A DNA stretch of 64,000 nucleotides, from positions 248,001 to 312,000 of IMG/VR virus record IMGVR_UViG_3300002143_000235, one strand, 5' to 3'. Shown here one piece after another: positions 5,259 through 63,544 of the stretch. The notes under the pieces are model-generated. The model was given only the letters and a program-made list of their open reading frames with translations. It had not been told where the DNA came from and did no database searches. Numbering within the stretch: position 1 is the stretch's first letter; every line of letters starts with the position of its first letter. The translations under genes and the position numbers were made by a program.

Positions 5259-5642
5259 ATGTTCACAAAAATATCTGGCTATAAATTATCATTAAAAGAA
5301 AATTTTGATTCAATTTTTAAAAGAACTGAGCAGGAAAAAATTGATTATCTTTTATCAAATACATCGACAAATGATTTATTATCTTTAAAGCAACAATTAA
5401 AAAATGAATTAAATTTTGATTTTGTTTTTGAAAATTATGCTAAAGATGAATACGGTCAAAAACATTTAGTTATATATGGATCAACTGCTGAAAGTATTGC
5501 TGAAAATGATAAATTATGTGAAATAGTCAATGTATGGGAAAAACAAAAAGGATTGACACAGACGATAGAATATAGTGGTAAACCAGATGAAGATGAATAC
5601 GAGTATATTGCAATTCGAATTAATCTTTTTCTTATAAAATAA
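5259..5642 (+). CDS. Putative internal head protein with capsid-targeting-like N-terminus
   Basis: Starts MFTKISGYKLSLKE; TATATA upstream at 5235. Confidence 0.55.
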   Translation: MFTKISGYKLSLKENFDSIFKRTEQEKIDYLLSNTSTNDLLSLKQQLKNELNFDFVFENYAKDEYGQKHLVIYGSTAESIAENDKLCEIVNVWEKQKGLTQTIEYSGKPDEDEYEYIAIRINLFLIK

Positions 5643-5654
5643 AAAAATATTTTT

Positions 5655-6248
5655 ATGTACACAAAAATATCTGACTTTAAAAAGTCACAATTGAATGAAT
5701 CTTTTGGTTCTAATTATACAAATCATCCAATGTCAAATCATGTCATAACAGTTGATGATGCTAAAGCTTTATATGCTTTAGAAGAAAGAGATTTAGGACT
5801 TAATGGTGATAATCTCGATATGGATTTTAATGAATTCTGTGAAGACATCGTTGGAGAAACTTTATCAAATTATGCTACATGGAGATGGCCAGACGAACCG
5901 CAACAACAATTTGATATGGCACTTGAAGTATTAGGTAATAGAATGCATGAATCAAAAAAAATAATTGTTGAAGCACTCGATCGTACTCAAGTATTTAGAC
6001 CGAGTATAGGTATGACTGTTGAAGACATAGCTGAAAATCTTTATGAAATTATTCAAGATGAATATTCTTCTGAAAATGATATTTCAGGTGTTAATGCAAT
6101 AATTTCAAAATTGACTCCAGAAATATGTCAATATTATGTTGATACAGCAATATACGAGGGTGGTGATGATGATGATGAAGAATATAGTCGAATTTATAAT
6201 GTTAAACTTGAAATATTAAAAGAATTGGGTATTGATGTAGAAGATTGA
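5655..6248 (+). CDS. Putative internal head protein with capsid-targeting-like N-terminus
   Basis: Starts MYTKISDFKKSQLNE; acidic body. Confidence 0.55.
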   Translation: MYTKISDFKKSQLNESFGSNYTNHPMSNHVITVDDAKALYALEERDLGLNGDNLDMDFNEFCEDIVGETLSNYATWRWPDEPQQQFDMALEVLGNRMHESKKIIVEALDRTQVFRPSIGMTVEDIAENLYEIIQDEYSSENDISGVNAIISKLTPEICQYYVDTAIYEGGDDDDEEYSRIYNVKLEILKELGIDVED

Positions 6249-33920: not shown

Positions 33921-33991
33921 GCCTGCTTAGTGTAATGGAAGCACATGTGGATTCTACCCACAGAGTGAGGGTTCAAGTCCTTCAGCGGGTA
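33921..33991 (+). tRNA. tRNA-Arg(TCT)
   Basis: Cloverleaf; anticodon arm TGTGG-ATTCTAC-CCACA; T loop TTCAAGT. Confidence 0.88.
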
Positions 33992-33998
33992 CTAAAAT

Positions 33999-34073
33999 GC
34001 GCTTGTAGTTTAATTGGAAAAATACTCGGCTACGAACCGAGAGACGTGACGGGTTCGACTCCCTCCAGGCGTA
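33999..34073 (+). tRNA. tRNA-Arg(ACG)
   Basis: Anticodon arm CTCGG-CTACGAA-CCGAG; T loop TTCGACT. Confidence 0.9.
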
Positions 34074-34078
34074 CTTAA

Positions 34079-34150
34079 GTTTCTGTAGTTCAACGGATAG
34101 AATGACCGGTTTCGGCCCGGTTGATGTGGGTTCAAATCCCGCCAGGAACT
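34079..34150 (+). tRNA. tRNA-Arg(TCG)
   Basis: Anticodon arm ACCGG-TTTCGGC-CCGGT; T loop TTCAAAT. Confidence 0.9.
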
Positions 34151-34152
34151 CT

Positions 34153-47099: not shown

Positions 47100-47174
47100 G
47101 ATAAGGTAGTTTAAGATAAAACATCCATAGAAGCTTTAACGCAGGATTTAAAGGTGCAAGTCCTTTTCTTATTA
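47100..47174 (+). ncRNA. tRNA-like RNA with expanded anticodon arm
   Basis: Acceptor GATAAGG/TCTTATT, D arm, T arm AAAGG-TGCAAGT-CCTTT; no 7-nt anticodon loop. Confidence 0.5.
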
Positions 47175-47889: not shown

Positions 47890-47975
47890 GCGGAGGTGGC
47901 GAAATTGATTAACGTTTACGGACAAGTTTTCGTAGATGAAAAAATTCAATGTTGGTTTGAGTCCAACCCTCTGCA
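47890..47975 (+). tRNA. tRNA-Leu-like RNA with aberrant 10-nt anticodon loop (pseudo-tRNA)
   Basis: GCGGAGGTGGCGAAATTG start, variable arm, T arm GTTGG-TTTGAGT-CCAAC, acceptor GCGGAGG/CCTCTGC. Confidence 0.6.
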
Positions 47976-47982
47976 CTAAAAT

Positions 47983-48053
47983 ACAGGGTTAGTTTAAAGT
48001 TAAAACGCGGATCGTTGGGATCCGAGATGTTGGTTCAATTCCAATACGCTGTA
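47983..48053 (+). tRNA. Atypical tRNA (TTG/Gln if 7-nt loop CGTTGGG; identity uncertain)
   Basis: Canonical spacing of all arms but G33 in the loop and a G-G acceptor mismatch. Confidence 0.6.
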
Positions 48054-59170: not shown

Positions 59171-59182
59171 GTATAATTGCAT
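59171..59182 (+). promoter_or_regulatory. Promoter-like 12-mer shared with the ncRNA array
   Basis: GTATAATTGCAT here and at 62427-62438. Confidence 0.55.
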
Positions 59183-59206
59183 CAATCCAAAAAATAAATT
59201 TACAAG

Positions 59207-60883
59207 ATGTTTAGCAACAAAAAAACACAATTGTTCCCGACGCCTGCGAAAGCCGCGTCCTCGAACAGAGCATCTGCGACAACAAACGCATTTGTTGGGA
59301 CTGCTATGAAGAAAGCAGCTGAGACACGTTCTGAGAACGGTGCTCTCAAATACAAAACTACAGGCGATGATTTCGTTGATCAATTCGGGAAACTGGGTGA
59401 AATGAAACAACCGCGTTCATTTGCAACCATTGCAAAAGATCAGGCATTACTATGGTCACAAAACAAACTACTTACTGTAGCATTCACATTATACATCCGT
59501 ATGATTACTCGTGTAACTAATGTATTTGGAACTGAAACTTCTGTTTCACAGAAAGGTGCAGAACTTCGTCATGAGGGTATTATGCGAATGATTTGGTTGC
59601 ATACAACAGCTCCAAAAACATTTTGGAATAACGTACCACTAATGGTATCAGTTGGTTCGTGGCAAGACATCTTTACGATGCTTCAATACGATCTTGTCTA
59701 TAATGGATGGGAAGGACGTAAACTTGACTGGACAAAGTTCGGTAAATTGATTCTTACTGGTCTTACAGATGAGACTCAAATGAACCTTGTTAAGAAATAC
59801 CTTCCACAAATCAAAGCAAAATCAGCATGTAAGACTGTTGAAGCGCAAGCTGACAACATGATCGGAAAATGGTTGTGTTCTTTGATCTTCGGTACAAAAA
59901 TTGGTCCAGAAGGTGCTACTTACAAAGCTTACCGTAAATTGAAAACTTCCGGAACAGCGCACGAGTGGCAGAAATTGATCTCGCAAGGTAAACACAAACT
60001 GGTTGATTTTAACACGATACACGGACGTGCTTTGAGTAAACTGGTACGTTCTAAATACTTAGCGAACCAGAATCTTACTGAGAAGTATGAAAGCTGGATC
60101 ACAAAAGATTCAACAACTGATGTGAAATACACTGGATTTGTTCACGAACTTTTCGCAGGTCTTCCATCAACAGAAGTTTCATTGGGTGTTGCAAAATCGG
60201 AAACGATCAACAAACAATTTGCAACACTTGTTAAGAAAGGTGGTAAAGGTGCAACAAACCTTATCGTTGTTCGTGATACATCTGGATCTATGGGTTCTAC
60301 AGCAACAGGAACAAACATGAGCTGTTATAACATTGCGAAAGCTTTGGCATTATACTTCTCTGAGTTCTTGACTGGAACATTCCAAGATGCATGGATTGAG
60401 TTTAATAATAATGCACAAATGCATACTTGGAAAGGTACAACACCAATTAATCGTTGGTACAACGACCGTTCAAGCTATGTTGGAGGCACAAATTTCCAAT
60501 CTGTTGTTGACTTGTTCATTAACATGAAACGCCAAGGTGTTGCTGAATCAGATTTTCCATCAGGAATTCTGTGTATCTCTGATGGTGAGTTCAATGCATC
60601 AGATTTAGGTAAAACAAATGTTGAATCAGCTCGACGTAAGTTGACTGCTGCTGGATTCAGTGCTGAGTATGTTCGTAACTTTGTGATTGTTCTTTGGAAC
60701 CTTCAATCTGGATACGGATCACGTGGCAATAAATTTGAAACCAACGGAGACGTTGAGAATGTATTTTATTTCTCTGGTTACTCAGCTGCAACTGTGTCGT
60801 TCTTAACGAATGATATCAAAACTGCTCGTGAGCTTTTCGAAGCTGCGATGAACCAGGAAGTTCTCTCAATGGTTCAAATCTAA
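59207..60883 (+). CDS. DUF2828-like / TROVE(Ro60)-related protein with C-terminal VWA domain
   Basis: SENGA.....T....VD.F N-terminus, GSWQD, KYLP; VWA MIDAS VRDTSGSM, GGTNFQ, CISDGEF, IVLWNL, SGYS. Confidence 0.75.
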   Translation: MFSNKKTQLFPTPAKAASSNRASATTNAFVGTAMKKAAETRSENGALKYKTTGDDFVDQFGKLGEMKQPRSFATIAKDQALLWSQNKLLTVAFTLYIRMITRVTNVFGTETSVSQKGAELRHEGIMRMIWLHTTAPKTFWNNVPLMVSVGSWQDIFTMLQYDLVYNGWEGRKLDWTKFGKLILTGLTDETQMNLVKKYLPQIKAKSACKTVEAQADNMIGKWLCSLIFGTKIGPEGATYKAYRKLKTSGTAHEWQKLISQGKHKLVDFNTIHGRALSKLVRSKYLANQNLTEKYESWITKDSTTDVKYTGFVHELFAGLPSTEVSLGVAKSETINKQFATLVKKGGKGATNLIVVRDTSGSMGSTATGTNMSCYNIAKALALYFSEFLTGTFQDAWIEFNNNAQMHTWKGTTPINRWYNDRSSYVGGTNFQSVVDLFINMKRQGVAESDFPSGILCISDGEFNASDLGKTNVESARRKLTAAGFSAEYVRNFVIVLWNLQSGYGSRGNKFETNGDVENVFYFSGYSAATVSFLTNDIKTARELFEAAMNQEVLSMVQI

Positions 60884-61428: not shown

Positions 61429-62142
61429 ATGGCAATTAATTTAGAAAAGATTGAAGAACGTAAACAATCCGTTATAAATCTTAAAAAAAACAAAGGTATT
61501 GAAACACAGAAGGCACAAGTTGTTTTATGTTTGGATTATTCAGGATCTATGGATGGTCTTTATCGATCTGGTGTCGTACAAGAAACACTTGAACGTGTTT
61601 TACCGCTCGGTTTAGCATTTGATGATAATGGTGAAGTTGATTTTTATTTGTTTGAATCTGGTATTCGTAAGATGCCATCGAATATCACACTTGGAAATAT
61701 TGATGGTTACATCAATGAAAAAGTGATGAATAAATATAGTATGGGTGGAACAAATTATGCTCCAGCAATCAATGCTATTGTTAATGAATTTGCTGAAACT
61801 ACTAAAAGTGGATTCTTTGGCAGTTCTAAACCAAAACAATTAGATCTTCCAGTATATGTAATTTTTATTACAGACGGTGAAAATTATGATGAAAGAGATG
61901 CAGAACGTGCAATGATTGAAGCATCTAAACATGGTATTTTCTTTCAATTTATTGGAATTGGTAATTCATCATTTCCATTTCTTGAAAAATTAGATGACAT
62001 GCCTGGACGTGTTATTGATAATGCAGACTTTTTCACTGTTCGTGATTTGAAAAACACATCAGACGATGATCTTTACAAAAAAATGATGACAGAATTTCCT
62101 GAATGGATTAGAATGTCACGTCAAGCTGGACAAATTAAATAA
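61429..62142 (+). CDS. VWA domain protein (vWA-TerF-like)
   Basis: LCLDYSGSM..LY..G.VQ...ER.L.L...FDDNG; GGTNYAPAI; VIFITDG; FFQFIGIG; LDDMPGRVIDNADFF. Confidence 0.85.
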   Translation: MAINLEKIEERKQSVINLKKNKGIETQKAQVVLCLDYSGSMDGLYRSGVVQETLERVLPLGLAFDDNGEVDFYLFESGIRKMPSNITLGNIDGYINEKVMNKYSMGGTNYAPAINAIVNEFAETTKSGFFGSSKPKQLDLPVYVIFITDGENYDERDAERAMIEASKHGIFFQFIGIGNSSFPFLEKLDDMPGRVIDNADFFTVRDLKNTSDDDLYKKMMTEFPEWIRMSRQAGQIK

Positions 62143-62145
62143 CAT

Positions 62146-62388
62146 ATGATTAATCAATTAGCTATCGAGTGTTACATGTTAACACAATCACATGAACCAA
62201 TTATTCAGATGCTAGAAGCAGCAGGAATTGAAACTGAAGATGGAGCAAGAATTGCATTGACTGGTGCAGTTAAATCTAATGTGGTTAGTGCTTTATCTTA
62301 CGGATCTTCTTCAGCAGGAATTTCAACATCAAGAACAGCTGGACGTGTTTTAGAGCACTTCAGAAAAAAAGAAGAAAAAAAAGCATAA
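62146..62388 (+). CDS. Hypothetical protein
   Basis: 80-aa ORF. Confidence 0.55.
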   Translation: MINQLAIECYMLTQSHEPIIQMLEAAGIETEDGARIALTGAVKSNVVSALSYGSSSAGISTSRTAGRVLEHFRKKEEKKA

Positions 62389-62483
62389 AAAAATTCAAAC
62401 AAATTTCTGTTATGCGAATATAAAACGTATAATTGCATAACAGAACAAATGCGTTCATTGACATATTGGTACAAAAAAATAAA

Positions 62484-63289
62484 AAATAACATACAGCAAT
62501 GTTTAATAACGGTTATGTCCGAAAGGACCTGTGTGTGAGCTGTCATCTGAAAAGACACGTATTGTAAATGGGATTGAGTAGATAACTCATTAAACGCTTG
62601 GAACCGTCCTGAATTACTTTACGTTATAAGAACTTAGTAAGTAGCATATCATGCAGTGATTGAATTAGCAAGCAGACAGATTGACTTATCATTAGTCTGA
62701 AATTCTTGCATGTTATTTGAACAAAAGATTTCTTACAGCAAATATTCGTTTAAGCATCCTTATAGCTCGTGGTCGTAGGTTCGATTCCTGCTCTCGCAAC
62801 AAATTAAAAAATAAATTGCGAGATAGCTCAGTGGTAGAGCACGTAATAACAAAAACAGAAATCTGATAAGATTAGTTACAGCAAACAAAACAAACATCAA
62901 ACTTTTACTTTGAACACGTTTAAAAACTCTAATCTGATAAGAAGTGTAACAGCAAAATCCTTTATGGTAAAAAATTTGACTCAAACTCAAAAATAGATGG
63001 TTCAAATCCGTCAGCTCGCCGGAGCATAAACGTCAACACTTCTGTACAAAGTCACTTACAGCAATTTTATAACACTGATTTTCTAACTCAATATGTTTAA
63101 AAATGTGACTTGAAAAAAGAGCACTTACAGCAAACTTAAAACTTTACTTTTTTTGGATAAAAGACGGGCAGGTTCGATTCCTGCGGTGCGCGAACACTCT
63201 CGGTGCGGATAAACTACACTGTGCTCTGATAAGGATACTTTCAGCAAATTTAAAAAAATTTCATTTGAAGAAAAAACAACACGTATCCT
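62484..63289 (+). ncRNA. Array of seven stem-bounded (A/T)CAGCAA RNAs carrying tRNA fragments (Y-RNA-like)
   Basis: Units 62484-62718, 62726-62864, 62869-62935, 62940-63043, 63049-63111, 63118-63227, 63232-63289, each closed by its own complementary 7-9 bp stem. Confidence 0.8.
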
Positions 63290-63364
63290 GAATTATTTGT
63301 ACCAATTATGCTTACTGCATAGTCAAAGAAAAACGACTAAATCCTGAGACGGAAATAGTTAATA

Positions 63365-63395
63365 AAAAAGGCCAGTCAAATTGACTGGCCTTTTT
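63365..63395. terminator. Bidirectional terminator ending the ncRNA array
   Basis: AAAAAGGCCAGTCAA / TTGACTGGCCTTTTT. Confidence 0.85.
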
Positions 63396-63544
63396 CTATT
63401 TCTTTAATTTTGCAATACTAAAATTAGAATCAAGTCTGACTCGATTAGTACTTGGCTTCCATTTTATGGTTGGCGTAAATTCTATTCTTTTAGGTAATTC
63501 TGGTTTACCTGAAGAATCTTTATAAGAAATAAAAACTTGTGCCA

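What the first reader, a model, noticed from the sequence alone, without database searches (positions are those of the whole stretch)
62427..63395. Array of seven covarying stem-bounded RNAs with a conserved (A/T)CAGCAA motif and tRNA-derived cargo
Seen: seven tandem units separated by only 3-7 nt. Each opens with a stem strand followed within 0-2 nt by (A/T)CAGCAA and closes with the complement followed by G: AAATAACAT/ATGTTATTT, AGATTTC/GAAATCT, AGATTAG/CTAATCT, AGAAGTG/CACTTCT, AAGTCAC/GTGACTT, AGAGCAC/GTGCTCT, AGGATAC/GTATCCT. Stem sequences differ but pairing is perfect, which is internal covariation evidence for RNA structure; 7 bp equals an acceptor-stem length. Interiors vary from about 35 to 210 nt. 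The array has its own promoter-like site (62427) and terminator (63365). Inference: a polycistronic precursor processed into a family of small RNAs sharing one protein-binding handle and each displaying a different payload, analogous to Y RNAs. It is not a CRISPR array.
Basis: partly seen in the sequence, partly recalled or inferred. Interest (0 to 1): 0.9.

Follow-up and report, generated by a model that had tools for sequence, protein, structure and literature searches.

The report
Y-RNA-like array beside Ro60-like gene
A large phage carries seven back-to-back small-RNA genes that share one "handle" and carry different, often tRNA-like, inserts; they sit next to a gene for a Ro60-like RNA-binding protein. 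The same protein–RNA pairing recurs, unannotated, in many phages (including Felix O1-type coliphages) and in bacteria, and the handle closely matches the enigmatic Class I RNAs of Dictyostelium.

Summary
Seven units (62484-63290, + strand) each have a perfect 7-9 bp closing stem, (A/T)CAGCAA just after the 5' strand, and a G after the 3' strand.

The units belong to a conserved RNA family.
- A gene 1.6 kb upstream (59207-60883; Pfam DUF7788, weak DUF2828) is predicted to fold like Ro60: a TROVE ring plus a vWA/MIDAS domain.
- All 19 related viral loci, 20 arrays found from the RNA pattern alone, 6 of 6 bacterial chromosomal DUF2828 loci, a cultured cyanophage and about 240 Felix O1-type phages keep this gene next to such units.
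- Stem covariation is overwhelming: 99.9% of cells paired, 226 double-sided changes.
- In 15 of 29 phage genes, including this one, the start codon lies inside a copy of the handle. This suggests autoregulation.
- Payloads include YrlA-like permuted tRNA modules, tRNA bodies and anticodon-arm-like hairpins.

Rfam's only match to the handle is Dictyostelium Class I RNA, just below threshold (37-40 bits; cut-off 41.5).

Best reading: these are Y-RNA-like partners of an uncharacterised Ro60 paralogue. Transcription, processing and binding are untested. No dictyostelid homologue of the protein was found.

The parts
59207..60883 (+). Gene for a 558-aa Ro60-like protein (helical TROVE-like ring plus vWA domain with a DxSxS MIDAS motif at residues 357-361). 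It is the proposed protein partner of the RNAs.
   Evidence: - Pfam DUF7788 at 3e-12, plus weak DUF2828.
- PHROG 850 'RNA-binding protein' at 3.5e-36.
- AF2 model with pLDDT 80 and pTM 0.80.
- The top nine Foldseek PDB hits are full-length Ro60/TROVE/Rsr structures, E 2e-8 to 7e-5, TM about 0.5.
- No sequence-level hit to PDB Ro60 and no Pfam TROVE hit.
59205..59276 (+). Degenerate handle copy spanning the start codon of the Ro60-like gene (AGAUGUU-U-AGCAA ... AGCAUCU-G). Proposed autoregulatory site.
   Evidence: - The minimum-energy fold closes with this stem and puts AUG inside the helix (-18.9 kcal/mol, z -2.4).
- 15 of 29 distinct phage homologues have AG before the ATG plus CAUCUG 34-67 nt downstream; background is 3% per 110 nt.
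- Several of these carry a perfect AACAGCAA motif.
62405..62445 (+). Hairpin with 18-nt arms between the last upstream ORF (stop codon at 62388) and the array.
   Evidence: repeat I1, 89% complementary. No T run follows it, so its role is unknown.
62465..62478 (+). 5' arm of a 14-nt inverted repeat that brackets the whole array.
   Evidence: repeat I4, 93% complementary with 63293-63306. Flank complementarity is beyond shuffles for this locus, but it is not seen at most other arrays.
62484..62719 (+). Unit 1: handle AAAUAACAU / AUGUUAUUU + G, with a 201-nt payload of unknown kind.
   Evidence: The payload is not alignable to long units elsewhere and is not unusually stable (z -0.8).
62726..62865 (+). 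Unit 2: handle AGAUUUC(U) / (A)GAAAUCU + G. The payload is a permuted tRNA-like module in the order T-arm, loop-closed acceptor-like stem, D-arm.
   Evidence: - YrlA model positions 24-84 match at 62768-62843 (35.6 bits, E 8e-6).
- The fold shows the three arms.
- Model R1 scores 25.7 bits.
62869..62936 (+). Unit 3: short unit. Its payload holds an anticodon-arm-like hairpin, UCAAA-CUUUUAC-UUUGA, at 62897-62913.
   Evidence: R1 scores 52.7 bits. RF01414 scores 24.5 bits.
62940..63044 (+). Unit 4: payload is a tRNA body in native order (anticodon-like arm, T-arm) plus an extra hairpin. The handle stands where an acceptor stem would be.
   Evidence: The tRNA model matches positions 10-63 at 62960-63012 (26.8 bits). 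The fold has z -3.1.
63049..63112 (+). Unit 5: short unit with handle AAGUCAC / GUGACUU + G.
   Evidence: R1 scores 52.6 bits. RF01414 scores 18.5 bits.
63118..63228 (+). Unit 6: payload contains a T-arm, GCAGG-UUCGAUU-CCUGC, at 63168-63184.
   Evidence: R1 scores 22.8 bits.
63232..63290 (+). Unit 7: short unit, and the best match to the Dictyostelium Class I RNA model.
   Evidence: RF01414 scores 37.3 bits (gathering score 41.5), E 3.7e-5, over the full model length. R1 scores 58.9 bits.
63293..63306 (+). 3' arm of the inverted repeat that brackets the array.
   Evidence: repeat I4.
63365..63395 (+). Intrinsic terminator that ends the array's transcription unit (it would work in both directions).
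   Evidence: 14-bp stem with 6 GC pairs, followed by a T run.

Best explanation
The array encodes seven small non-coding RNAs of one conserved family. They are the RNA partners of the divergent Ro60-like protein (TROVE-like ring plus vWA domain; Pfam DUF2828/DUF7788) encoded 1.6 kb upstream on the same strand.

Each RNA has two parts:
- A constant handle: a 7-9 bp stem joining its two ends (usually 5' AG... and ...CU 3'), single-stranded ACAGCAA directly after the 5' strand, and an unpaired G after the 3' strand. The handle is inferred to be the protein-binding site.
- A variable payload between the two stem strands. It can be a YrlA-like permuted tRNA module, a tRNA body, an anticodon-arm-like hairpin, or something unrecognised.

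The seven units are probably transcribed together, ending at the terminator at 63365-63395. They would then be cut apart in the 3-6 nt A/U-rich spacers, as in a phage tRNA operon. In Felix O1-type phages the units actually sit between tRNA genes.

The protein probably also binds a handle copy that covers its own start codon, which would limit its own translation.

By analogy with Ro60-Y RNA particles, and given the RNA-repair genes linked to the family elsewhere, the particle most likely acts on tRNAs or tRNA-directed enzymes during infection. The payloads would serve as tRNA mimics that tether, gate or decoy such enzymes.

Shown here: the anatomy, conservation, covariation and gene linkage. 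Inferred: direct binding, processing and the biological role.
For: 1. Anatomy of the seven units.

2. The neighbouring gene is Ro60-like by fold. The AF2 model has pLDDT 80, and its top nine PDB matches are full-length Ro60/Rsr/TROVE structures. It has a MIDAS DxSxS motif and matches PHROG 850 'RNA-binding protein'.

3. Linkage, starting from the protein: all 19 other viral loci carrying a homologue (38-77% identity) hold 2 to more than 10 units on the same strand within about 1.3 kb.

4. Linkage, starting from the RNA: a pattern made only of handle and spacer sequence found 23 viral stretches.
- 20 are true arrays.
- 15 of these contain the gene in the fetched DNA.
- The other 5 are cut loci, or duplicates of contigs where the gene is adjacent.
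- Among 29 pattern hits in bacterial genomes, the single true array (L060) also has the gene.

5. The other neighbouring genes in the window are not conserved with the array.

6. Depth of conservation: chromosomal DUF2828 genes of Bacteroidota and related bacteria are 27% identical to the phage protein. All 6 examined have handle-bearing RNAs beside them. One locus shows a permuted topology, with the handle as a hairpin in the anticodon position of a tRNA-like RNA.

7. Cultured phages:
- Leptolyngbya phage Lbo-JY46 has 5 units right after the gene.
- Escherichia phage garuso has 4 units inside the tRNA cluster, after its 'vWFA protein' gene.
- The two units searched are conserved and mostly unannotated in about 240 Felix O1-type genomes.

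8. Covariation: 102 model hits, 99.9% of cells paired, all 7 pairs covary, 226 double-sided changes. Slid controls pair at 34-55%.

9. Autoregulatory mimic at the start codon in 15 of 29 genes, against a 3% background.

10. Payloads:
- YrlA or tRNA sub-threshold hits lie inside units in several loci.
- 42 of 127 distinct units have a T-loop.
- 30 of 127 have an anticodon-loop-like hairpin, against 3.3 in shuffles.

11. RNA-repair context elsewhere:
- WYL regulator, RtcB and 5 tRNA genes directly upstream in L076.
- An RNA ligase gene nearby in L077.
- A fusion to a 2H phosphoesterase domain in a Rhizamoeba transcript.
Against: - There is no expression, processing or binding data of any kind.
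- The protein has no sequence-level similarity to Ro60 or to Pfam TROVE. The fold match is moderate (TM about 0.5) and rests on a predicted model.
- The handle lacks the GNCGAA(N)G motif reported for the YrlA Ro60-binding region (PMC4201824). How the handle would be bound cannot be inferred from Ro60-Y RNA structures.
- Gene-RNA adjacency could reflect a shared pathway rather than direct contact.
- No RNA-repair gene was found among the window proteins scanned.
- The covariation alignment was fitted to the model, which inflates pairing somewhat.
- The proposed role (tRNA mimicry for tethering or decoy) is by analogy only.
Confidence: 0.72

Rival explanations
1. The handle is a processing or stability signal read by host tRNA-maturation or decay enzymes (RNase P, Z or E), not by the Ro60-like protein. 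On this view the array is an extension of the phage tRNA repertoire that yields tRNA-like decoys. The Ro60-like protein works in the same pathway without binding the handle.
For: - The stem has acceptor-stem length and is followed by one unpaired base, like a discriminator.
- In phage garuso the units lie between tRNA genes in one cluster.
- Many payloads are tRNA-like.
Against: - It does not explain why a handle copy covers the start codon of the Ro60-like gene in half of the phage homologues.
- It does not explain why the gene and RNA stay adjacent across 27%-identity distances while every other neighbour changes.
- Short units lack a T-arm, so they lack the acceptor/T-arm stack that established knowledge says RNase P and RNase Z recognise.
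- ARAGORN calls none of the units a tRNA.
Confidence: 0.15
2. The units are canonical bacterial Y RNAs (YrlA family) serving an ordinary Ro60 orthologue. If so, this is a known system that is merely unannotated.
For: The unit 2 payload, and payloads in other loci, match the tRNA-like core of Rfam YrlA. The protein has a Ro60-like fold.
Against: - YrlA scores are 25-38 bits against a gathering score of 69. In the window and two other units they cover only the tRNA-like core (model positions about 23-88), not the Ro60-binding stem; two other low-scoring hits span the full model.
- Most units have no tRNA-like module at all.
- The conserved motif is ACAGCAA, not GNCGAA(N)G.
- The protein is not detected by Pfam TROVE or by HMMER against PDB Ro60 sequences.
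Confidence: 0.05
3. The array is decayed tRNA genes or another non-functional remnant, and the shared motif is inherited from one duplicated ancestor.
For: tRNA fragments occur inside units 2, 4 and 6. The units are tandem.
Against: - Stems differ in sequence yet pair perfectly, with compensatory changes across 101 distinct sequences.
- The motif and end nucleotides are held constant while the interiors are unrelated.
- The family persists next to the same gene in distant phages and in bacteria.
Confidence: 0.02
4. The array is a repeat-RNA system of another kind: a CRISPR-like array, an RNA anti-CRISPR, or a type III toxin-antitoxin antitoxin array (ToxI-like) cut by a cognate endoribonuclease.
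For: The layout is tandem and closely spaced, with a conserved short motif and a single terminator.
Against: - There is no repeated constant sequence longer than 7 nt.
- Unit lengths range from 58 to 235 nt.
- No Cas or ToxN-like gene was found among the neighbours scanned.
- No Rfam CRISPR repeat or antitoxin family matched the units.
Confidence: 0.02

Closest known systems
Ro60 (Rsr) with its Y RNAs, especially bacterial and phage YrlA (Rfam RF02553; Chen et al. 2014, PMC4201824)
   Same: - A ring-plus-vWA protein is encoded next to one or several small RNAs whose 5' and 3' ends pair into a stem.
- Some of the RNAs carry a tRNA-like module with a T-arm, a loop-closed acceptor-like stem and a D-arm. 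The unit 2 payload matches that part of the YrlA model.
- Some family members are linked to RtcB or RNA-ligase repair genes.
   Different: - The protein family is DUF2828/DUF7788, which Pfam TROVE and HMMER do not detect as Ro60.
- The handle motif is ACAGCAA with a 3' CUG, not the GNCGAA(N)G region.
- Most units are about 60 nt and have no tRNA module.
- Phage arrays hold up to 10 or more units.
- A handle copy lies over the gene's own start codon.
- No binding has been shown.
Class I RNAs of dictyostelid social amoebae (Rfam RF01414; Kjellin et al. 2021, PMC7919456)
   Same: - A short terminal stem starts with G and ends with C.
- (C)UUACAGCAA comes directly after the 5' strand.
- The interior is variable and A-rich.
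- The 3' end is CUG(U).
- The short units are about 60 nt.
- The genes are often clustered.
- RF01414 is the only Rfam family that recognises the handle: 37.3 bits here, 39.7 and 39.3 bits in other phages, 30.4 bits in a bacterial chromosome. All hits lie inside units.
   Different: - All scores are below the gathering score of 41.5.
- The units are phage or bacterial, tandem and apparently polycistronic, not individually transcribed from a DUSE promoter.
- Many units are far longer and carry tRNA-like payloads.
- The only known Dictyostelium binder is the RRM protein Rnp1A.
- No dictyostelid DUF2828 homologue was found here.
- Class I RNAs were reported to be absent outside Dictyostelia.
Polycistronic phage tRNA gene clusters
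   Same: - Tandem, tightly spaced structured RNAs on one strand with a single terminator.
- A 7-bp terminal stem followed by one unpaired base.
- In Felix O1-type phages the units are interleaved with real tRNA genes.
   Different: - There is no cloverleaf and no anticodon in the proper context.
- tRNA finders do not call the units.
- The ACAGCAA motif is conserved.
- Payload sizes and types vary.

Membership tests
Rfam RF01414 Dicty_Class_I_RNA | Score at or above the curated gathering threshold (41.5 bits) | tested here: not met
   Best score in the window is 37.3 bits (unit 7). Four other units score 18.5-24.5 bits. Related arrays reach 39.7, 34.1, 39.3, 30.7 and 30.4 bits. None reaches the threshold.
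Rfam RF01414 Dicty_Class_I_RNA | Short stem joining the 5' and 3' ends, with 5'-most G paired to C, followed by UG(U) | tested here: met
   Five of 7 units read (A)G-N5 ... N5-C-U-G. Across 127 distinct units, 95 start with AG and 86 end with CUG.
Rfam RF01414 Dicty_Class_I_RNA | Conserved 11-nt motif CCUUACAGCAA adjacent to the 5' stem strand, with U3, C6, C9, A10 and A11 near-invariant (PMC7919456) | tested here: inconclusive
   CAGCAA is invariant and ACAGCAA occurs in 112 of 127 units. UUACAGCAA occurs in 4 of the 7 window units. The first four motif positions are not conserved across the phage and bacterial family.
Rfam RF01414 Dicty_Class_I_RNA | Length 42-65 nt; individually transcribed from a DUSE promoter about 60 nt upstream; found in Dictyostelia | tested here: not met
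   Unit lengths are 58-235 nt and only 2 of 7 are 65 nt or shorter. The units are tandem with 3-6 nt spacers, in a phage genome.
Rfam RF02553 YrlA (bacterial Y RNA) | Full-length model match at or above the gathering score (69 bits) | tested here: not met
   Scores are 35.6 bits over model positions 24-84 in unit 2 and 24.6-37.9 bits in other loci.
Rfam RF02553 YrlA (bacterial Y RNA) | tRNA-like domain: T-arm, loop-closed acceptor-like stem, D-arm | tested here: met
   Unit 2 at 62768-62843. The module is present in only a minority of units.
Rfam RF02553 YrlA (bacterial Y RNA) | Ro60-binding stem region with the GNCGAA(N0-1)G motif (PMC4201824) | tested here: not met
   The sequence shows that the handle positions carry ACAGCAA instead.
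Ro60 / TROVE protein family (for the neighbouring gene) | Pfam TROVE domain or sequence similarity to Ro60/Rsr | tested here: not met
   No TROVE hit at E <= 0.01. No PDB Ro60 hit with phmmer or with a 22-sequence profile.
Ro60 / TROVE protein family (for the neighbouring gene) | Fold: helical-repeat ring followed by a vWA domain with a MIDAS motif | tested here: met
   The AF2 model (pLDDT 80) aligns over its full length to 9kop, 9nep, 2i91, 1yvr, 1yvp and 2nvo (E 2e-8 to 7e-5, TM 0.42-0.53). D357, S359 and S361 are invariant.
Ro60 / TROVE protein family (for the neighbouring gene) | Binds adjacent stem-bearing small RNAs | not testable with these tools
   Only indirect support: strict gene-RNA linkage and the start-codon handle mimic.
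tRNA | Cloverleaf recognised by tRNA finders | tested here: not met
   ARAGORN finds none in 62400-63400. The Rfam tRNA model gives only 26.8 bits (gathering score 29), and only over positions 10-63, in unit 4.
CRISPR array / ToxI-type antitoxin array | Near-identical direct repeats of fixed length, with cognate cas or toxin genes | tested here: not met
   The only shared sequence is a 7-nt motif plus 2-3 terminal bases. Unit lengths are 58-235 nt. None of the neighbouring proteins scanned is Cas- or ToxN-like.

The most novel reading that the evidence does not exclude
The Class I RNAs of dictyostelid amoebae are abundant, developmentally regulated RNAs. Their function has been unknown for about 20 years, and they are thought to be unique to Dictyostelia.

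On this reading they are eukaryotic members of the same family as these phage and bacterial RNAs. They would then be Y-RNA-like ligands of a DUF2828-type Ro60 paralogue, shared or exchanged between bacteria, their phages and Amoebozoa.

This would give Class I RNAs a candidate protein partner and a candidate biochemical role in RNA surveillance or repair. It would also define a second, widespread Ro/Y-type ribonucleoprotein.

Evidence that does not exclude this reading:
- The handle is identical: G-stem, (UU)ACAGCAA, C-UG(U).
- Near-threshold, unit-specific RF01414 hits occur in three phage lineages and one bacterial chromosome.
- Bacterial-type DUF2828 proteins appear in four amoebozoan transcriptomes.

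Against it:
- No dictyostelid homologue appeared among the best 120 hits of two searches seeded with the amoebozoan proteins.
- Those transcripts could come from bacteria in the cultures.
- The known Dictyostelium binder is an RRM protein.
Probability: 0.35. Interest if true: 0.92.

Novelty: new variant of a known kind. Interest (0 to 1): 0.85.

Why it matters
- It would define a second Ro60/Y-RNA-type ribonucleoprotein built on an uncharacterised protein family. DUF2828/DUF7788 has thousands of members, including 351 cultured phage genomes and many Bacteroidota chromosomes. Its RNA partner is in no RNA-family database under a bacterial or phage name.
- These RNAs lie unannotated inside the tRNA regions of Felix O1-type phages that grow on E. 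coli K-12. The prediction can therefore be tested at once in a standard laboratory system.
- The payloads are tRNA modules and anticodon-arm mimics, and some homologues are linked to RtcB, RNA ligase or a 2H phosphoesterase. This points to a role in the tRNA-centred conflict between phages and hosts, or in RNA repair. That role would also bear on the unexplained tRNA-like domain of YrlA.
- The handle's near-identity to Dictyostelium Class I RNAs makes an old open question directly testable: what those RNAs bind and what they do.

Tried and rejected
1. **Nearest phage by DNA.** blastn of the array against cultured phages found only a tRNA fragment match in Aeromonas phages.
2. **Array-wide closing stem.** The 14-nt inverted repeat bracketing the window's array is not a general feature of other arrays. 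It is kept as a local observation only.
3. **Unit 1 payload.** There is no Rfam family above noise, no alignable relative among other long units, and no unusual stability. Its nature is left unknown.
4. **Promoter.** The consensus scan is not above chance. A shared TATAATTGCA occurs upstream of both the gene and the array, but the surrounding sequences do not align.
5. **Bacterial genome scan with the RNA pattern.** 28 of 29 hits were chance matches in coding DNA.
6. **Conserved gene neighbours.** The three ORFs between the gene and the array, including a vWA-TerF-like protein, are not conserved beside arrays elsewhere.
7. **RNA-repair genes in the window.** None was found among 19 proteins scanned.
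8. **Dictyostelid DUF2828 homologue.** It could not be found or excluded. The searches list only the best 120-150 hits, and those are dominated by bacteria and phages.
9. **Literature.** No paper in the library treats DUF2828/DUF7788 function or links Felix O1-type phages to Y RNAs. Avesson et al. 2011, which lists the four Class I RNA-associated proteins, and the Sim et al. 2020 review are not held.
10. **Sequence-profile link from the protein to Ro60.** None was found. Only the predicted fold links them.
Full report
**What is there**

On the + strand between 62484 and 63290 lie seven consecutive units. Each unit has three fixed features:
- It opens with a 7-9 nt strand that pairs perfectly with the strand closing the unit.
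- ACAGCAA (TCAGCAA in unit 7) begins 0-2 nt after the opening strand.
- A G follows the closing strand.

Only 3-6 further bases separate one unit from the next, most often AUAA. Unit lengths are 235, 139, 67, 104, 63, 110 and 58 nt.

The surroundings are as follows:
- A strong intrinsic terminator follows at 63365-63395.
- A 14-nt inverted repeat (62465-62478 / 63293-63306) brackets the whole array.
- No ORF of 60 aa or more lies on the + strand between 62389 and 63544.
- ARAGORN finds no tRNA in the array.

The TATAAT at 62428 sits inside a hairpin, and promoter-like matches in the region are not above chance.

**The payloads**

- Unit 2 holds a circularly permuted tRNA-like module: T-arm, acceptor-like stem closed by a loop, then D-arm. 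This matches the tRNA-like core of Rfam YrlA (35.6 bits, model positions 24-84, E 8e-6).
- Unit 4 holds a tRNA body in native order, lacking only the acceptor stem (tRNA model positions 10-63, 26.8 bits).
- Unit 6 holds a T-arm.
- Unit 3 holds an anticodon-arm-like hairpin with loop CUUUUAC.
- Units 5 and 7 are short and A-rich.
- The 201-nt payload of unit 1 is unrecognised.

**The neighbouring gene**

The window is the end of a 313.7-kb viral contig. The 558-aa ORF at 59207-60883 lies 1.6 kb upstream on the same strand.

Sequence-level evidence:
- It matches Pfam DUF7788 (3e-12) and, weakly, DUF2828.
- It matches PHROG 850 'RNA-binding protein'.
- It has an invariant DxSxS MIDAS motif.

Structure-level evidence:
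- An AlphaFold2 model from a 22-sequence alignment has pLDDT 80 and pTM 0.80.
- Its nine best PDB matches are full-length alignments to Ro60/TROVE structures: a phage Trove domain, Xenopus and human Ro60 with and without RNA, and Deinococcus Rsr (E 2e-8 to 7e-5, TM 0.42-0.53).

Sequence methods do not see this relationship. The protein is therefore a divergent Ro60-like protein, not a recognised Ro60 orthologue.

**The gene and the RNAs travel together**

*Starting from the protein.* Nineteen other viral loci carry homologues at 38-77% identity. Every one has 2 to more than 10 units of the same design on the same strand, just downstream or just upstream of the gene.

*Starting from the RNA alone.* I searched with the pattern ACAGCAA-N30-60-CUGAUAAG-N5-9-ACAGCAA.
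- It hit 23 viral stretches, of which 20 are true arrays.
- Fifteen contain the gene within the DNA fetched.
- The other five are truncated loci or copies of contigs where the gene is adjacent.
- In 596 Gb of bacterial genomes the same pattern gave 29 hits. Twenty-eight are chance matches, and the one true array (a Bacteroides MAG contig) has the gene.

The three ORFs between the gene and the array in the window are not conserved elsewhere.

**Structure statistics**

A covariance model built from 37 short units finds 102 units at E < 0.001 in 425 kb of such loci, apart from one stray minus-strand hit in L003 (E 0.0004). In the window it finds nothing convincing outside the array.

On the resulting alignment:
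- 99.9% of 701 cells form standard pairs.
- All seven pairs show changes on both sides (226 cells).
- Sliding the partner strand by 1-3 columns drops pairing to 34-55%.

The alignment is fitted to the model, which favours the structure, but the margin is very large.

**The family is much wider than this phage**

The profile finds 3,590 protein clusters at 50% identity. Homologues are chromosomal in Bacteroidota and other bacteria and are annotated only as 'DUF2828 family protein'. They are 27% identical to the phage protein.

All six chromosomal loci examined have handle-bearing RNAs within about 250 nt on the same strand, for example AGAUUAC-CACAGCA(A/C)...GUAAUCU-GUG.

The sixth locus, L078, is instructive. 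It has two tRNA-like RNAs whose anticodon position is replaced by a hairpin, GUGUCUUG-UA-CAAGACAC, followed by CACAGCAA. That is the same handle, closed at its outer end, with the tRNA acceptor ends left free. This is the circular permutation of the window's unit 2. So the handle and the tRNA-like module are two separable parts that evolution has joined in both topologies.

RNA-repair genes appear near or within some family members:
- One bacterial locus has a WYL regulator, RtcB and five tRNA genes directly upstream.
- Another has an RNA ligase gene nearby.
- A Rhizamoeba transcript fuses the protein to a 2H phosphoesterase domain.

**Cultured phages**

tblastn finds homologues in 351 deposited phage genomes.
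- Leptolyngbya phage Lbo-JY46 (47% identity) has five units immediately after the gene.
- Escherichia phage garuso, a Felixounavirus grown on E. coli K-12 MG1655, has four units. They are interleaved with the tRNA genes downstream of its 'vWFA protein' gene, and one carries a YrlA-like permuted tRNA module.
- The two garuso units searched are conserved at 80% identity or more in about 240 Felix O1-type genomes, and nearly all are unannotated.

No paper in the library connects these phages, or DUF2828/DUF7788, with Y RNAs.

**A handle copy over the start codon**

In several loci (first seen in L009, L019, L022, L031 and L037) the sequence AG-AUG-UUU-AAC-AGC-AA...AAACAUCU-G forms a complete unit whose 5' strand contains the start codon of the Ro60-like gene.

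Of 29 distinct phage genes, 15 have AG before the ATG, and all 15 also have CAUCUG 34-67 nt downstream. Background is 3% per 110 nt.

The window's gene has a degenerate version at 59205-59276. Its minimum-energy fold closes with exactly this stem.

The simplest explanation is that the protein binds the handle and represses its own translation. This is the best available indirect evidence that the protein is what reads the handle.

**Payload statistics**

Among 127 distinct array units:
- 42 contain a T-loop.
- 30 contain a 5-bp/7-nt hairpin that is not a T-loop and has the anticodon-loop signature (Y-U-NNN-R-N), against 3.3 in shuffles.
- Of 94 hairpins of that geometry, 30 have the signature, against 6.8 expected from base composition.
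- The most frequent 'anticodons' are UUU (6), UCU (4) and UUG (3).

This is suggestive of tRNA mimicry, but it is not proof.

**How it most likely works**

*Shown:*
- A conserved RNA family with a constant handle and modular payloads.
- Strict genomic linkage to a Ro60-fold protein.

*Inferred:*
- The array is transcribed as one precursor ending at the terminator.
- The precursor is cut in the A/U-rich spacers, as in the tRNA operons where the Felix O1-type units reside.
- Each RNA is bound at its handle by the Ro60-like protein.
- The payload then presents a tRNA-like or other module.

In known Ro60-Y RNA particles the RNA gates the protein and tethers it to partners such as PNPase, and YrlA mimics tRNA (PMC4201824). 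By analogy, and given the RtcB, RNA-ligase and 2H-phosphoesterase associations, the particle probably acts in tRNA or RNA surveillance or repair. Alternatively it may act as a decoy or tether for tRNA-directed enzymes during infection.

I put the partnership at about 0.8 and the specific role at about 0.4.

**Comparison with known families**

*YrlA.* The system works like Ro60-Y RNA, but it is not a member of the YrlA family. Scores are far below threshold, and in the window they are limited to the tRNA-like core. The YrlA motif GNCGAA(N)G is absent. The protein is not a recognisable TROVE protein.

*Dictyostelium Class I RNA.* The only Rfam family that recognises the handle itself is RF01414.
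- Five of the seven units hit it; the best is 37.3 bits, E 3.7e-5, over the full model length.
- Units in other phages score 39.7, 34.1, 39.3 and 30.7 bits, and a unit in a bacterial chromosome scores 30.4 bits.
- Every hit lies inside a unit. All are below the gathering score of 41.5.
- The two consensus sequences agree closely. Rfam gives GAUcuC-CUUACAGCAA-UuaAAac...AAAAAc...GagAuC-UG. The units give (A)GAUnAC-nUACAGCAA-nUUAAAAAA...AAAAAC-GUnAUC-UG.

Class I RNAs were reported to be unique to Dictyostelia, and their function is unknown; they bind the RRM protein Rnp1A (PMC7919456).

Bacterial-type DUF2828 proteins occur in four amoebozoan transcriptomes: Rhizamoeba, Dracoamoeba, Pellita and Endostelium. 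These could be bacterial contaminants. No dictyostelid homologue appeared in the truncated hit lists. Homology is therefore a live but unproven reading.

**Verdict**

It extends to a widespread, undescribed protein-RNA pair. I rate it a new variant of a known kind (Ro60/Y-RNA-type particles), with a substantial chance of explaining a class of eukaryotic RNAs whose function is unknown.

Noticed in passing
L010:4514-4599 (+): A Hatchet self-cleaving ribozyme scores above the Rfam threshold (68.6 bits; gathering score 51). It lies about 1 kb upstream of that phage's unit array (5640-5942) and Ro60-like gene.
   Followed up: no
L031:2497-2584 (+) and L031:4355-4723 (+): A RAGATH-1 hammerhead-like match (49 bits; gathering score 56.3) lies immediately upstream of the start-codon handle mimic of the Ro60-like gene. 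A weak tmRNA-like match (23 bits) follows the gene, next to a tRNA.
   Followed up: no
L078:5663-5888 (+): Two tandem tRNA-like RNAs lie downstream of a chromosomal DUF2828 gene. In each, the anticodon position is replaced by a hairpin version of the handle plus CACAGCAA. This is a circular permutation of the phage unit design, and ARAGORN does not call them tRNAs.
   Followed up: partly
L076:2021-8060: A bacterial chromosome (8-Mb contig) has, in order: a WYL regulator, RtcB, five tRNA genes, the DUF2828 gene, and three handle units, one of which is followed by a T-loop-bearing segment. This resembles the rsr-yrlA-rtcBA repair operon layout.
   Followed up: partly
window 59172-59181 and 62428-62437 (+): The 10-mer TATAATTGCA occurs exactly twice in the 64 kb: 35 nt before the Ro60-like gene's ATG and 56 nt before unit 1. 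It may be a shared promoter element, but the flanking sequences do not align.
   Followed up: partly
window 47100-47174 and 47890-47975 (+): Two tRNA-model matches just above the Rfam threshold (34.9 and 34.0 bits) that ARAGORN does not call. They lie beside tRNA-Gln at 47983. They may be unusual or degenerate tRNAs. The window also has three tandem tRNA-Arg genes (33921-34151) and a tRNA-Met (43989).
   Followed up: no
protein P0231 (Rhizamoeba saxonica transcriptome, EukProt): An 843-aa protein fuses DUF2828+DUF7788 to a 2H phosphoesterase / 2'-5' RNA ligase-type domain (PF13563). Three other amoebozoan transcriptomes hold unfused homologues that are 53-62% identical to each other.
   Followed up: partly
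window 61429-62142 (+): A vWA-TerF-like protein (Pfam 7.7e-61) is encoded between the Ro60-like gene and the array. A homologue lies near the array in only one other phage lineage (L023/L030).
   Followed up: partly
L073:4760-5400 (+): Upstream of the Lewinella DUF2828 gene and its units there are several direct repeats of roughly 150-190 nt. Each contains a long GC-rich hairpin (cagtcgtcggacga...tcgtccgacgac) followed by a T run. Their nature is unknown.
   Followed up: no
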